From Salisapilia sapeloensis CBS 127946 (lineage: Eukaryota; Protista; Oomycota), in contig JAADVB010000204.1 in assembly GCA_023334545.1 (NCBI GenBank), positions 1-34,936 of the forward strand: DNA of 34,936 bases. Reading direction: 5' to 3'. The number at the start of each line of letters is the position of its first letter. Position 1 is the first letter of the stretch. Below are positions 1,158 to 5,226 of the stretch, piece after piece. The position numbers and the translations under genes are program-made. The notes beneath the pieces are model-generated. The model was not told the DNA's origin. It saw only the letters and a program-made list of their open reading frames with translations, and did not search any database.

Positions 1158-3207
1158 TTAATGCAATAAGGATGTAATAGACTGTCCATAGTCAAACCTG
1201 GTTTGAAGATATATTACCACATCATATCCGATTCAACATCTTCTTATACCTACTTCAATGGTGTTACACTGTTCCTTTCCACTTCACTAAGACGTCGATG
1301 GGACAGTGAGTTCTTTCGAGGGGTTGCTGGCTTAATTTCACCCGTACAAATCATTTCCGCCGTAGTTTCTCTTCTTTTTGGAGTTTGCCGGATAAAACGT
1401 ACACCTCGAGGAGAGATCATGGCTCGCACAGTACGCGTCGTATTGGCTTTATCGAACGGAACATCTATAAAATGACAAGGTGCCTTACAAGGATATCCCG
1501 GTACTTGTGGAGTCTTCGTTGGAGCTACTTCAGAGCTTTCTCTTGAAGAGTTTACTTCATGACTTGCTTTTCGCGATACCAGATAAGAGTGTGCTGTGGA
1601 CGGCCGAGATACAAAAGCAAGTGATGGTCGCACGACCAATTCCTTCGAAGGATTTTCCGCTTGACCGACCAGGTAACCAGTAACCAATGGATCTGTTGTC
1701 ATCTTATCGGCACATTGCCGAGTTGCAGCCGATACAGAACCTCGTGCTCTTGTGGCTGGCCCGGAAGAAGGCCGCCTAGATGGTCGCCGCTGCTGCATAC
1801 TTGCTTCATCTTCATATATCATTCCATTCGTACTGGATGATAAAGAAGTGCTATCAGTAGAGTCTTGCGTAAAATCAACTAGAGAAACCATGTACATTAA
1901 GCGAGATACAAGATATATGTAATACAGAAAGTTCACCCTTTTGGTTAATATCGTTGACGTTCGCAGTGGACAAGAGAGTTGCTCTGCTCTTTCCTGGTGA
2001 TGCGCTCTGTGGTCTTTGTGGTTTAGAAGCGCTCATCACACCGATGTGATGGATAACAGGTCTTGACAAACGAGCGAAAACCTCGTCCTTTTCTACATGA
2101 TGAATCGTGGACCGGTGGCGTGCGGTATCATTCAATCCGGCTATCTCGAAACGCGAATATGAGTACGTGAAGTGCACCTTTCACTAGCAAAATGTACCAT
2201 TTAAATACTTCTTTTCCATGCCATCATGCACTCTTGTTTGCTTTCTGTTCCTGATATCCCTTTCAGCACTTACTGTAGATCTACGAGCTACATTTCCATC
2301 GACATTCCTCCTTGGGTTTGGACCATGCTTCATCTCCATGATCCTTTTAATATCATGTTCGGTCATCTTTTCTGCTCCCTTTGAAATGTCCATGGAACGG
2401 ACCTCGCTAATATCTTTCATCACGTATCTCCCGTTCAATTCCATCGTCAAGTTGGTAAGGATGCACGAGAGGAGGGCTATGTACTGTAAATGAGCTAAAC
2501 ACAAGGAGACTATAAGCTTTCAGAGAAGCTAGAGATACAATTGAGCACGTACGCTTTTGATACTTATGTCGTCTGCCCATAGTTCTATTCAGCAATGAAT
2601 TCAGCAATTTGCAAAGACGAACGGCAAAAGGTGGAGACTTACCGGCGAGTTCAATCATGGAAACGTGAAAGTAGCTGTAGTCCAAGTAATCTTTACCCTT
2701 CGTATCTCGTACCCAGTCCTCTCGAATCAATCTCTTCGATTCCACCAACTCGAATTTAGGCAGGATAAGTACGTGCAGTCTCAACATAAACACACTGTAC
2801 TCTTCGTACGAAAGTATATTGTCTCCCGTTGAAGCACATTGCCATAGCTTATTTGTAAGCGAAAGAATCACTTTATTTCGTTTCACATCGGCTCGCTTCT
2901 GAAGGCTTTCCTATTCCAAAGTAAGTACCAGATACCACGACGACGCAAAGTGTTTTCATGTCCAAAGTACCTTTGGGTAAGAGCTACATATCCTCTTGCT
3001 TGGAGACTTTGACTCGTTCGTGACAGGAGCAACATTAGCTCCATTGATAGTCTGGACATCTAGCACCGGTTGTCCAATGCTCGCCAATAGCGGCAACCTC
3101 TTTAGGTTAATGATTACTTTCACAGCACTCTTGAGACTGCATAGCTTTCGATAGTGTGTCTTCAAAGAAGCTAGCGGCTGATGCACATCGTCTTGTACAT
3201 CCATCAT
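1158..3207 (-). CDS. 7-exon hypothetical protein (~563 aa): EF-hand-like N-terminal helical domain, long low-complexity C-terminus
   Basis: GT-AG introns 2911-2970, 2585-2642, 2484-2552, 2141-2197, 1879-1936 and 1198-1253 join five ORF-track fragments in frame. It includes a 32-nt exon (2553-2584). The last exon is tentative; the alternative stop is at 1250. The segment ...GDNILSYEEYSVFMLRLH...EDWVRDTKGKDYLDYSYFHVSMIELAELW looks EF-hand-like. Confidence 0.7.
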
Positions 3208-3352
3208 CCAATAGCCTCTACGCCGACACTAGTTCCTCTAGGCGAAAGCCAGAAATAAATATATCGATAGCATCAAGAAACGAACAGTGTCGACTAGATA
3301 AACAACACAAGACGATCAGCGACACGATACAAAAAGATGCCATACATTTTCT

Positions 3353-5173
3353 TCAAAGAACCAAGGAACCATCTACTAGCACTCCATTCCGAGCATCATT
3401 TCGTGCCCTCTCCATTCGTTCACGCAGAAGACTCATTCGATTTAAAATCTTCCGTCGGTTCCGTTCACTCGATGTCGTATCGAGCTGAACCTGCGACAAA
3501 GTATACGCCTTTTGCCATTCCTGACATTCAATCAACGCCAGGACCAAGTTGTTCAAAATCGTTCGTTCCCGCTTCGAGTCGTTGATACTTCGTGTGATTT
3601 CAAGACATCGCTCGTAGCACTCGACCGCTTGCTGTGGTTCGCCACGGTCCAGGTAGACAGTACCGAGGTTACCAAGCGCACGAGCCTCAACTACCTTATC
3701 ATTATCCCGCTTCGCTGCTCTCTCGGCCGAAACAAAGTGAGAAACGGCGCCGTCCAGATCTTTCTTCTGATATAACTCCATCCCAGTATTCAATTCGTTT
3801 AGAGCCGAGACATCTGACAGATCCGTCTCGGTGTCAGGAATGTCATCCGTATCGTCTGATTGGAAAGACTGAGCTATATCATTGCTAGCAAACGCTCCAT
3901 ATACATCCTTGTCAGGGTGACCGTTCTCTTTTTCGATCCTTGGTATCGGCACGTTTGATGTTTCTACATTTCCTGCACCGATACTAGAGGTAATAGATTG
4001 GAAAGTAGCATACTCGTCCTCTGTCTGATTATTACTAGGAAAGCTACCAGGAGACGGATCATCTCGTTGGTTGGACAGTTGGAGGGTCGAGAAGGTGCTA
4101 TAGTCATCATCGATAGGATACGTTTCGTGTGTCTCGTTTGATGGAGCAAGCTGTTTTGCTGTTGTAAATGGAGATGTGATCGACTCGGGCGTGAAGCCAG
4201 AGTAAGTGTCATCAGCCACTGGCTCCGGTTGATGCACGACAGCTTTTGCTGGTGATGTGCTGGCATGAGAAAAGAGACCGCCGTCGGTATTGGATGTGGC
4301 GGGAGAAGACATGTCCATCGCTTCCGCACTAAACGTCGTGTACGTCTCACTCTGCTCTTCGACAATCGCACGCACTCTCGTCAGCTCTTCATTACACTGC
4401 TTCGACAGTGTCGATGGAACCTAGAGCATCAAGGCTATCAGTAACCAATATACGTATCTGTAGATAGAATGCACGCACTGGATGCTTGAGACGAGTGGCA
4501 CTACGATGGACAAACGACCGGATCGAATTGTAACTTCGATTCTTCGAGTCCGTCAGTCTATATCCCTGTGTCCCAATATTCTCTAGTAAACTATTCTTAA
4601 TCTCTCGCTTGCCAGCACTCGATCCAGCAGTCTTCGGATGGACTTTGACGTATGTAAGCGTGAACTTCGTCGGTCGAGACTCGCTAAAGCGAATGAGAAA
4701 GGCGCCGTCGCCATACCTTTCATCTGACAGTAATGACTCTGCTGCTGCTCGACTCATATCGCCGTGAAACCAAGGTGCTAACTCTCTCTTCACGTAGAGA
4801 CTGTCGACTACTTTACTAAGCGATAGCTCGATCGGACCGAAGCGAGCGATGAAATGACTAAACTGCAGCATACATTTAAATTTAAAAGAACATGGCTTGG
4901 TCTGAAGGTATAGCATAGACGTACATCTTCTCTCGTGATGCCAATGTGCTCTGATGGCGTGTAACTGCTTGGTACGGTTGGAATGATACAGTATCGAGCG
5001 ATAATACGTAGCTCTGCGATGGAAATGCAACTGCTTCTGGTGTCAAACATGCTGCATTTTTTCTCGAGTGCTGGTAAAAAGTCGGTAGTAAAAGGCACGA
5101 CGTCTCGTCCAGAACCAAAGCACTCGTACCACCACTTCCAAGCGTACTCCTCGCTTACTTCGCTACCGACCAT
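3353..5173 (-). CDS. SH2-domain + TPR adaptor protein (~566 aa, 3 exons)
   Basis: Introns 4863-4924 and 4421-4478 give one open frame. SH2 motifs: PWFHGDMSRAAAESLL and GAFLIRFSES. TPRs: EARALGNLGTVYLDRGEPQQAVECYERCLEI and ERTILNNLVLAL. Confidence 0.85.
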
Positions 5174-5226
5174 ATTCCGTTATGAATACATTTTGGCCAG
5201 TCGTATACCGCAATTAATAAAAATAG

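What the first reader, a model, noticed from the sequence alone, without database searches (positions are those of the whole stretch)
3890..4351. Five acidic Y-x-x-F motifs arrayed between the SH2 and TPR domains
Seen: SETYTTFS, DDTYSGFT, DDDYSTFS, EDEYATFQ and KDVYGAFA are spaced 46, 34, 30 and 37 aa apart in an otherwise unconserved linker, giving the consensus [DE]xY[STAG][TGA]F. Established: acidic residues before Tyr and a hydrophobic +3 residue are typical of tyrosine-kinase sites that dock SH2 domains. Inference: the protein carries both the reader and multiple ligands, allowing phospho-switched autoinhibition, oligomerisation or condensate formation. This would be a self-contained pTyr module outside animals and amoebae.
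Basis: partly seen in the sequence, partly recalled or inferred. Interest (0 to 1): 0.8.

Follow-up and report, generated by a model that had tools for sequence, protein, structure and literature searches.

The report
Conserved tyrosine motif array in SH2-TPR adaptor
An oomycete gene encodes a protein with a phosphotyrosine-reader (SH2) domain, a floppy acidic linker carrying five tyrosine motifs conserved across stramenopiles, and a peptide-binding TPR domain; it looks like a phosphotyrosine docking scaffold in a lineage where such signalling has barely been studied, but phosphorylation has not been shown.

Summary
The gene (minus strand, three exons, 566 aa) is confirmed by spliced RNA contigs. 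It encodes a Cbl/Shk-type EF-hand-like+SH2 head, a roughly 190-aa acidic disordered linker and a 3.5-repeat LGN/KLC-like TPR.

Five of the six linker tyrosines sit in [DE]-x-Y-[GSAT]-x-F, against 0.27 expected (p<0.0005). Each of the five aligns with a Tyr in nearly all of 20 orthologues, from Phytophthora to Saprolegnia. Y/F core identity is 0.89, against 0.14 for spacers and 0.53-0.58 for the folded domains.

The same Y-G/S-x-F motif recurs in the family's relative in Triparma (an ochrophyte). In Cantina the tyrosines sit instead in YxxLP. Position 0 is Tyr in 205 unique instances, with at most a handful of Phe.

The SH2 keeps both phosphate-binding arginines. The family logo S-D-x-Y-G-S-F resembles the Src peptide EEIYGEF.

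Best reading (about 0.45): a multi-site pTyr docking region on an SH2 adaptor. No phosphorylation or binding data exist. The main rival (about 0.25) is a phospho-independent Tyr-acidic motif read by the protein's own TPR or by another partner. This is a new variant of a known kind, of moderately high interest.

The parts
4925..5173 (-). Exon 1 (aa 1-83): N-terminal half of the EF-hand-like domain
   Evidence: ATG at 5173; RNA contigs reach 5161-5177 and join 4925 to 4862. It aligns with orthologue N-termini (BLAST from aa 2 or 14 onward). The orthologue model shows a helix-loop-helix pair here.
4863..4924 (-). Intron 1, 62 nt, GTACGT...CAG, phase 0
   Evidence: Sequence, coordinates, skipped in RNA contigs of runs X1-X3.
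4479..4862 (-). Exon 2 (aa 84-211): end of the EF-hand-like domain plus the SH2 domain (SH2 about nt 4479-4775; Arg121 alphaA2, Arg141 betaB5 in FLIRFSES)
   Evidence: Pfam SH2 E=1.1e-11; phmmer to SHP-2 and Grb2 SH2 with the FLVR Arg aligned; invariant W, R, R, S columns in orthologues.
4421..4478 (-). Intron 2, 58 nt, GTGCGT...TAG; joins the SH2 frame to the linker frame
   Evidence: skipped in RNA contigs of X1-X3 and in a fragment of X5.
3353..4420 (-). Exon 3 (aa 212-566 plus stop): post-SH2 helix, acidic disordered linker, TPR domain
   Evidence: ORF, RNA contigs, orthologue alignment.
4328..4351 (-). Motif 1, SETYTTFS (Y238); in an orthologue it sits at the C-terminal end of the helix that follows the SH2
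   Evidence: Tyr in 20 of 20 aligned orthologues, with the flank S-x-S-Y-[AST]-A-F-S-T-E. In the P0025 model the helix spans 212-239 and the Tyr is Y235.
4190..4213 (-). Motif 2, DDTYSGFT (Y284)
   Evidence: Aligned Tyr in 19 of 20 orthologues, with the flank [SD]-D-S-Y-[AS]-[SG]-F-[TS]-L-D.
4088..4111 (-). Motif 3, DDDYSTFS (Y318); F321-x-x-L324 also gives a LIR-like core
   Evidence: Aligned Tyr in 18 of 20 orthologues.
3998..4021 (-). Motif 4, EDEYATFQ (Y348)
   Evidence: Aligned Tyr in 17 of 20 orthologues (two are gaps in short gene models, one is lost), with the flank S-D-E-Y-A-[ST]-F.
3887..3910 (-). Motif 5, KDVYGAFA (Y385), the one closest to the Src-type [IV]-Y-G-x-F pattern
   Evidence: Aligned Tyr in 19 of 20 orthologues, with the flank D-[VI]-Y-G-x-F-A-[SA]-L.
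3419..3805 (-). TPR domain (aa about 417-545), 3.5 repeats plus a capping helix
   Evidence: Pfam TPR_12, TPR_1 and others. pLDDT above 90 in the orthologue model. Foldseek matches LGN/Pins, KLC and Hop TPR2A. Identity to orthologues 0.58.

Best explanation
The gene encodes a cytosolic adaptor found across stramenopiles. It has three parts: an EF-hand-like+SH2 head of the Cbl/Shk/STAT type, an acidic disordered linker, and a small peptide-binding TPR.

The five [DE]-x-Y-[GSAT]-x-F motifs in the linker are short linear motifs under strong purifying selection, and they specifically need tyrosine. The most likely mechanism is as follows. Tyrosine-kinase-type or dual-specificity kinases phosphorylate these tyrosines. 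The resulting pY-x-x-F sites then dock SH2 domains. Those could be the protein's own SH2, in cis or head-to-tail between molecules, or the SH2 domains of the few other SH2 proteins in the genome. The protein would then work as a switchable multi-site scaffold, like the p130Cas substrate domain or SLP-76/Gab-type docking proteins, with the TPR holding a further constitutive partner.

Shown here: the gene model and its transcript; the motifs, their enrichment, positional conservation and Tyr-specificity; a disordered linker; a canonical SH2 pocket and fold; a peptide-binding-type TPR.

Inferred: phosphorylation, SH2 docking, and scaffold behaviour.
For: 1. Motif statistics. 5 of 6 linker Tyr are in YxxF against 0.27 expected. 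Across about 20 orthologues, 129 of 191 linker Tyr are in YxxF. The logo is S-D-x-Y-G-S-F-A-S.
2. Positional conservation. All five window motifs are conserved from Phytophthora, Pythium and Lagenidium to Saprolegnia and Aphanomyces. Y/F core identity is 0.89, spacers 0.14, SH2 0.53, TPR 0.58.
3. Tyr-specificity. In the pattern [DESN]-x-aromatic-[GAST]-x-hydrophobic, Tyr holds position 0 in 205 unique instances. Nearly all of the 18 Phe cases are the +3 Phe of a preceding motif. Position +3 does tolerate L, I and V. A purely hydrophobic anchor would be expected to swap Y and F.
4. Deep relatives with the same architecture. Triparma (P0103: PYGSF twice, PYSQF) and P0154 keep Y-G/S-x-F. Cantina (P0139) keeps the repeated Tyr but in YxxLP, and P0056 in YxxxGF. 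So Tyr is the constant.
5. Reader domain. Arg alphaA2 and the FLxR Arg betaB5 are invariant and align with the pocket Arg of SHP-2. The orthologue model (pLDDT 88) matches the Cbl TKB, Dictyostelium STAT and Src SH2, and Dictyostelium ShkA-D and CblA.
6. Substrate-like context. Acidic -2/-3, Gly +1 and Phe +3 match the standard Src substrate peptide AEEEEIYGEFEAKKKKG (PMC5876402). Motif 5 is D-V-Y-G-A-F.
7. Writers plausibly exist. Phytophthora has two putative tyrosine kinases, 139 TKLs and dual-specificity phosphatases (PMC3019232). Unchecked scan notes report kinases with tyrosine-kinase-type catalytic loops and four more SH2 proteins in this genome.
8. The linker is predicted disordered (pLDDT about 35), strongly acidic (34 D/E against 8 K/R) and rich in Ser/Thr.
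Against: There are no phosphoproteomic or binding data. No oomycete phosphoproteome was found in the searchable library.

AlphaFold2 of a full-length orthologue docks no motif onto the SH2 or the TPR.

PMC3019232 reports no orthologue of the two putative Phytophthora tyrosine kinases in the downy mildew Hyaloperonospora. Yet the downy mildews Peronospora effusa and P. farinosa keep the protein and its motifs. So those kinases cannot be the universal writers.

The protein's own TPR is of a class (KLC, LGN, Hop) that binds acidic or aromatic peptides without phosphate, and it is co-inherited with the motifs just as the SH2 is.

Tyr-specific but phospho-independent motifs also exist; the KLC 'Y-acidic' motifs are one example (own knowledge).
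Confidence: 0.45

Rival explanations
1. The motifs are a phospho-independent Tyr-acidic docking motif. The unmodified [DE]-x-Y-G-x-F peptides lie in the concave groove of a TPR, either the protein's own C-terminal TPR (giving autoinhibition or head-to-tail chains) or that of a partner. This would work as W-acidic and Y-acidic motifs bind kinesin light chain, or as the GoLoco and NuMA peptides bind LGN. The SH2 then has a separate job.
For: The TPR is the best-conserved part of the protein (identity 0.58, many columns at 90% or more). Its closest structures are peptide-binding TPRs, namely LGN/Pins complexes, KLC1/2 and Hop TPR2A. The motif is acidic plus aromatic, like KLC ligands (own knowledge). 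The TPR is co-inherited with the motif array in Triparma and in P0154. A linker-only search finds the array only in this family, which fits an in-family reader.
Against: AlphaFold2 docks no motif in the TPR groove although the TPR itself has pLDDT above 90. The near-absolute exclusion of Phe and Trp at position 0 is unusual for a groove-filling aromatic. In Cantina and in P0056 the residues around Tyr change completely while the TPR signature RALGN persists.
Confidence: 0.25
2. The motifs are a trafficking or autophagy signal, read either as YxxPhi by an AP mu subunit, as an acidic aromatic-G-x-Phi motif by an AP-1 gamma-ear/GAE domain, or as an Atg8-interacting (LIR) motif.
For: All five match Y-x-x-[LMVIF]. 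The overall shape, an acidic run followed by aromatic, small, x and hydrophobic residues, resembles the gamma-ear motif D-F-G-x-Phi (own knowledge). F(+3)-x-x-[LI](+6) gives LIR-like cores in window motifs 3 and 4. A hydrophobic residue at +6 is common in orthologues (L 28%, F 13%).
Against: The protein has no transmembrane segment (maximum Kyte-Doolittle 19-aa window 1.41), whereas YxxPhi signals act in the tails of membrane cargo. None of the motifs fits the GAE pattern as I recall it from ELM: position 0 is Tyr not Phe, and position +2 is mostly S or T rather than D, E, A or P. Canonical LIRs need L, I or V at +3 and disfavour Gly at +1, whereas here +3 is Phe in about 90% of instances and +1 is Gly in 66%. 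The linker has no companion endocytic motifs (DPF, NPF, FxDxF, WxxF). The +6 position is hydrophobic in only about half of the instances.
Confidence: 0.12
3. The motifs are generic aromatic 'stickers' in an acidic low-complexity region. They would drive phase separation without any dedicated reader domain.
For: The aromatic residues are evenly spaced (30-46 aa) in a disordered region. Saprolegnia-type repeats (SYGQF, AYGRF) recall the [GS]Y[GS] repeats of FUS-like domains (own knowledge).
Against: Stickers do not need a fixed D at -2, G at +1 and F at +3, nor motif-specific flanks kept at orthologous positions. The linker is strongly net-negative and poor in G, Q and N, unlike prion-like domains.
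Confidence: 0.08

Closest known systems
Multi-tyrosine docking regions of animal adaptors (p130Cas substrate domain with 15 YxxP; SLP-76, BLNK, Gab, Shc)
   Same: A disordered region carries a repeated acidic Tyr-x-x-hydrophobic motif next to a modular interaction domain in a protein without catalytic activity. The motif context resembles a tyrosine-kinase optimum (EEIYGEF).
   Different: There is no sequence homology. The +3 residue is Phe rather than Pro, Leu or Asn. The partner domains are an EF-hand-like+SH2 head and a TPR. The lineage is stramenopiles. Phosphorylation is unproven.
Cbl TKB domain and Dictyostelium Shk kinase/CblA EF-hand+SH2 module
   Same: The N-terminal 220 aa of the orthologue model superpose on the Cbl/Cbl-b TKB (E=2.7e-7, about 200-220 columns) and on ShkA-D and CblA (TM 0.5). 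Many wider relatives hit Pfam Cbl_N2+SH2. A conserved Tyr sits on or at the end of a helix just after the SH2, as Tyr371 does in the Cbl linker helix (own knowledge).
   Different: There is no RING, no kinase domain and no recognisable four-helix bundle. Pfam Cbl_N2 does not hit the window protein itself. What follows is a long Tyr-motif linker and a TPR.
STAT (linker domain + SH2 + tail phosphotyrosine)
   Same: An EF-hand-like linker domain plus SH2, followed shortly by a conserved Tyr (motif 1, about 30 aa after the SH2). Dictyostelium STAT is among the top structural hits (1uus and 1uur).
   Different: There is no coiled-coil or DNA-binding domain. There are five or more tyrosines rather than one, and a C-terminal TPR.
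Pex5 / kinesin light chain ligand systems (arrays of di-aromatic or aromatic-acidic motifs plus a TPR)
   Same: A disordered region with several spaced aromatic motifs sits in the same protein as a TPR (Pex5: WxxxF/Y repeats plus a TPR). KLC-type TPRs read acidic aromatic motifs (own knowledge; TPR fold match).
   Different: The motif is Y-x-x-F with strict Tyr. The TPR has only 3.5 repeats and is not Pex5-like. An SH2 is present.

Membership tests
SH2 domain (Pfam PF00017) | Profile match above the curated threshold | tested here: met
   45.1 bits against a cutoff of 21, E=1.1e-11, on exon 2. The match covers only the N-terminal 48 of 77 profile positions.
SH2 domain (Pfam PF00017) | Phosphate-binding arginines (alphaA2 and betaB5 of the FLVR motif) | tested here: met
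   R121 and R141 (FLIRFSES). Both are invariant in the orthologues. R141 aligns with the FLVR Arg of SHP-2 and Grb2.
SH2 domain (Pfam PF00017) | SH2 fold (central sheet flanked by two helices) | tested here: met
   The AF2 model of the Pythium orthologue (pLDDT 88) has H120-127, three long strands and H194-200. Foldseek matches Src, SHP-2 and Cbl SH2. This was done on an orthologue, not on the window protein itself.
SH2 domain (Pfam PF00017) | Binds phosphotyrosine peptides | not testable with these tools
   Needs ITC or fluorescence polarisation with pY peptides.
Cbl family (TKB-RING E3 ligases) | EF-hand-like domain packed against the SH2 | tested here: met
   Foldseek aligns about 200-220 columns to Cbl/Cbl-b. 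Wider relatives hit Cbl_N2. The window exon 1 alone gives no Pfam hit.
Cbl family (TKB-RING E3 ligases) | RING finger after the linker helix | tested here: not met
   No RING in Pfam. The sequence after the helix is a disordered linker and a TPR. It is therefore not a Cbl.
STAT | Coiled-coil and DNA-binding domains N-terminal of the linker-SH2 unit | tested here: not met
   Only about 110 aa precede the SH2, and all of them form the EF-hand-like domain.
TPR proteins | Tandem 34-aa helix-turn-helix repeats | tested here: met
   TPR_12, TPR_1, TPR_7 and others above cutoff. Seven helices with pLDDT above 90. Matches LGN, KLC and Hop.
Multi-site phosphotyrosine docking adaptor | Repeated Tyr motif in a disordered region, conserved as a motif while the spacers drift | tested here: met
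Multi-site phosphotyrosine docking adaptor | The tyrosines are phosphorylated in vivo | not testable with these tools
   No oomycete phosphoproteome is held in the paper library.
Multi-site phosphotyrosine docking adaptor | Phosphorylated motifs recruit SH2 domains | not testable with these tools
   AF2 single-chain modelling of an orthologue shows no docking, but it cannot model phosphate.
YxxPhi mu-adaptin sorting signal | Located in the cytosolic tail of a membrane protein | tested here: not met
   No hydrophobic segment (maximum KD window 1.41, inside a helix of the EF-hand-like domain).
LIR/AIM (Atg8-interacting motif) | Core [WFY]-x-x-[LIV] | tested here: not met
   Counting from Tyr, +3 is Phe in all five window motifs and in 129 of 144 family instances. 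Only the shifted F-x-x-[LI] reading fits, and only for window motifs 3 and 4.
AP-1 gamma-ear / GAE-binding motif | [DE][DES][DEGAS]-F-[SGAD]-[DEAP]-[LVIMFD] (ELM pattern, recalled from memory) | tested here: not met
   No match in the linker. Position 0 is always Tyr.

The most novel reading that the evidence does not exclude
Stramenopiles have an ancient phosphotyrosine scaffold of their own that evolved independently of the animal and amoebozoan toolkits. Tyrosine phosphorylation would then switch it between a closed state and head-to-tail polymers or condensates, which recruit the lineage's other SH2 proteins.
Probability: 0.2. Interest if true: 0.85.

Novelty: new variant of a known kind. 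Interest (0 to 1): 0.62.

Why it matters
Whether reader-based phosphotyrosine signalling operates outside Holozoa and Amoebozoa is an open question. Oomycetes have only a handful of SH2 proteins and two debated tyrosine kinases (PMC3019232).

This family offers a concrete test object, conserved across stramenopiles: a canonical SH2 fused to an array of strictly conserved, kinase-substrate-like tyrosines. If the tyrosines are phosphorylated, they give defined sites for phosphoproteomics, a bait for finding the kinases and phosphatases, and a genetic handle (Y-to-F) in organisms that include major crop and fish pathogens. If they are not, the family defines a new Tyr-specific linear motif, probably read by a TPR.

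Tried and rejected
- Prokaryote-style ORF reading. The SH2 and the linker lie in different frames with a stop between them. A 58-nt intron resolves this, and RNA confirms it.
- Search for other proteins with the same motif array, using only the P. infestans linker as query. It returned orthologues only. The motif is therefore not obviously a widely used oomycete SLiM at that sensitivity. This is weak negative evidence.
- AlphaFold2 of a full-length orthologue, to see whether a motif docks on the SH2 or the TPR. The linker stays at pLDDT about 35 and undocked, so this is uninformative for either reader.
- Phosphoproteome literature (four searches). No oomycete data set is held.
- The Liu et al. 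2011 and Liu & Nash 2012 SH2-evolution papers are not held. I could not check whether they list this SH2-TPR architecture.
- Endocytic accessory motifs, the GAE pattern and a transmembrane segment are all absent.
- STAT and Cbl membership were rejected because there is no DNA-binding domain and no RING.
- The spliced window protein could not be passed by reference to the structure tools. Both models are therefore of orthologues: P0019 (Saprolegnia) and P0025 (Pythium).
Full report
**1. What is in the sequence**

The region lies on the minus strand of a eukaryotic, intron-containing gene. A straight translation breaks between the SH2 and the linker. Two short introns with GT...AG ends restore one frame. 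They are 62 nt (4863-4924) and 58 nt (4421-4478).

The model has three exons: 5173-4925, 4862-4479 and 4420-3353. It gives 566 aa. Contigs from three RNA runs are 100% identical to the window, span 3301-5177 and skip exactly these two introns. The SH2, linker and TPR are therefore one transcript. The spliced protein aligns end to end with a Phytophthora capsici protein (aa 2-549 against 1-661, E=1e-113).

Pfam finds SH2 on exon 2 (E=1.1e-11) and TPRs at the end of exon 3 (TPR_12, E=1.7e-10).

**2.

The tyrosines Y238, Y284, Y318, Y348 and Y385 sit in SETYTTFS, DDTYSGFT, DDDYSTFS, EDEYATFQ and KDVYGAFA.

- Five of the six linker tyrosines are in YxxF. Shuffling the linker gives 0.27 on average (p<=0.0005).
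- In about 70,000 aa of six-frame translation of the whole window there are ten acidic-Y[GSAT]xF matches, and five of them are these.
- The linker is acidic (34 D/E against 8 K/R) and rich in Ser/Thr, with no Trp.

**3. Orthologues: motif kept, spacers not**

The protein belongs to a family annotated only as 'hypothetical' or 'SH2 domain-containing'. Members were found in Phytophthora, Peronospora, Pythium, Lagenidium, Aphanomyces, Saprolegnia and Thraustotheca. The window protein is about equally distant from all of them (33-38% identity over long alignments), so it comes from a divergent oomycete.

- Every orthologue's linker is full of the same motif: 5-9 YxxF each against 0.3-1.0 expected, all with p<=0.001.
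- Pooled over about 20 orthologues, 129 of 191 linker tyrosines are in YxxF.
- The logo is S(-3) D(-2) x Y G(+1, 66%) S(+2) F A/S S/A L/F.
- All five window tyrosines align with a Tyr in 17-20 of 20 orthologues. Motif-specific flanks such as S-x-S-Y-A-A-F-S-T-E-S and S-D-E-Y-A-S-F-A-N-L argue for true positional orthology rather than mere repeat matching.
- Identity to the window sequence is 0.89 for the Y/F core, 0.42 for positions -3 to +5, and 0.14 for the spacers. It is 0.53 for the SH2 and 0.58 for the TPR.
- Linker length ranges from about 190 to 470 aa.

**4. Tyrosine is the constant**

In the pattern [DESN]-x-aromatic-[GAST]-x-hydrophobic, Tyr holds position 0 in 205 unique instances. 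The 18 Phe instances are almost all the +3 Phe of a preceding motif, which leaves a handful at most. Position +3 does accept L, I and V.

The family reaches beyond oomycetes. The Triparma (Bolidophyceae) protein has PYGSF twice and PYSQF. A metagenomic relative (P0154) has YSTF and YGSF. The Cantina marsupialis relative has YDILP, YEALP and YSALP. P0056 has four Y-x-x-x-G-F. The Pteridomonas and Tribonema members have few linker tyrosines.

So Y-G/S-x-F predates the split between oomycetes and ochrophytes. Where the motif has changed, the tyrosine stayed.

**5. The flanking domains**

A 72-sequence alignment gave a confident model of the first 285 aa of the Pythium orthologue (pLDDT 88, pTM 0.78). 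It shows a helix-loop-helix pair domain, an SH2, and then a long helix (212-239) whose end carries motif 1 (Y235).

- Foldseek places the module with the Cbl/Cbl-b TKB domain (about 200-220 aligned columns), Dictyostelium STAT, and the Src and SHP-2 SH2 domains.
- In Swiss-Prot models it matches Dictyostelium ShkA-D and CblA (TM 0.5).
- The profile of this module finds about 1950 relatives. Many of them carry Pfam Cbl_N2+SH2.
- Both phosphate-binding arginines are invariant in the family (R121 and R141 in the window protein). R141 aligns with the FLVR arginine of SHP-2.

The C-terminal TPR is the best-predicted part (pLDDT above 90). It matches peptide-binding TPRs: LGN/Pins complexes, kinesin light chain and Hop TPR2A. 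The linker in the full-length Saprolegnia model is disordered (pLDDT about 35) and docks on neither domain.

**6. How it most likely works**

The combination points to tyrosine phosphorylation sites that become SH2 docking sites:
- strict Tyr at position 0;
- acidic residues at -2 and -3, Gly at +1 and Phe at +3, which is the pattern of the standard Src substrate peptide AEEEEIYGEFEAKKKKG (PMC5876402);
- disorder;
- a canonical SH2 in the same chain.

The architecture would then work like the p130Cas substrate domain or SLP-76/Gab-type docking proteins.

Plausible writers exist. Phytophthora has two putative tyrosine kinases, 139 TKLs and dual-specificity phosphatases, and only four SH2 proteins (PMC3019232). 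Unchecked notes of this scan list further SH2 proteins and kinases with tyrosine-kinase-type catalytic loops in the same genome.

I put this reading at about 0.45.

**7. Rivals**

- The strongest rival (about 0.25) is that the unphosphorylated acidic Tyr motif is read by a TPR, possibly the protein's own. KLC reads W-acidic and Y-acidic motifs, and LGN binds its own GoLoco region. The TPR is as faithfully co-inherited with the motif as the SH2 is.
- Trafficking or autophagy readings (about 0.12) fit poorly. There is no membrane anchor. There is no match to the GAE pattern as I recall it. Phe rather than L, I or V sits at the LIR position, and Gly is common at +1. No companion DPF, NPF or FxDxF motifs are present.
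- Generic aromatic stickers (about 0.08) do not explain the fixed D(-2), G(+1) and F(+3) or the motif-specific flanks.

One point counts against the main reading. The two putative Phytophthora tyrosine kinases have no orthologue in Hyaloperonospora (PMC3019232), yet downy mildews of the genus Peronospora keep the motifs. Other kinases would therefore have to act.

**8. What could not be done**

- No oomycete phosphoproteome is in the searchable library.
- The key SH2-evolution papers are not held.
- The spliced window protein could not be given to the structure tools, so the models are of orthologues.
- The tools cannot model phosphotyrosine or complexes.

**9. Verdict**

The reader domain and the ligand-like motifs are both real and canonical-looking, but phosphorylation, self-binding and condensates remain inference.

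It is not a member of the Cbl or STAT families (no RING, no DNA-binding domain), although its head is of their type. I class it as a new variant of a known kind, namely an SH2 adaptor with a multi-tyrosine docking region, in a lineage where this has not been described in the papers I could search.

Noticed in passing
window 1158-3207 (-): The gene just downstream of the SH2-TPR gene has a homologue that is fused to the N-terminus of the SH2-TPR protein in two Phytophthora gene models (P0023 and P0024). There it lies upstream on the same strand. The adjacency is conserved, but the order differs, or the Phytophthora models merge two genes.
   Followed up: partly
orthologue linkers (P0002, P0003, P0009, P0015, P0018, P0023 and others): A conserved L-G-P-P-P-P-P(P) stretch, a possible profilin, SH3, EVH1 or GYF ligand, sits between the Tyr motifs in Phytophthora and, in weaker form, in Saprolegniales. 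It is absent from the window protein.
   Followed up: no
window 4343-4411 (-), aa about 215-237: Motif 1 differs in kind from the other four. In the confident Pythium model it ends a long helix that directly follows the SH2 (H212-239, Y235). This recalls the regulatory Tyr371 on the Cbl linker helix and the tail Tyr of STATs.
   Followed up: partly
representative hits P0046-P0169: The EF-hand-like+SH2 module has about 1950 relatives in public data, with varied partners. Examples are Cbl_N2+SH2+PP2C phosphatase (P0060) and EVH1(PP4R3)+Cbl_N2+SH2 (P0063). This is a large, mostly unannotated set of protist SH2 proteins.
   Followed up: partly
window 3561-4858, runs X5 and X6: RNA runs of a second organism (coded B) hold fragments 95-99% identical to this gene, including the 58-nt splice joint. 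A close relative expresses the orthologue.
   Followed up: no
window 4091-4093 / 4082-4084 and 4001-4003 / 3992-3994 (-): The Phe at +3 together with Leu or Ile at +6 forms LIR-like F-x-x-[LI] cores in motifs 3 and 4 only. A hydrophobic residue at +6 occurs in about half of the family's motifs. The motif may therefore extend to Y-x-x-F-x-x-hydrophobic.
   Followed up: partly
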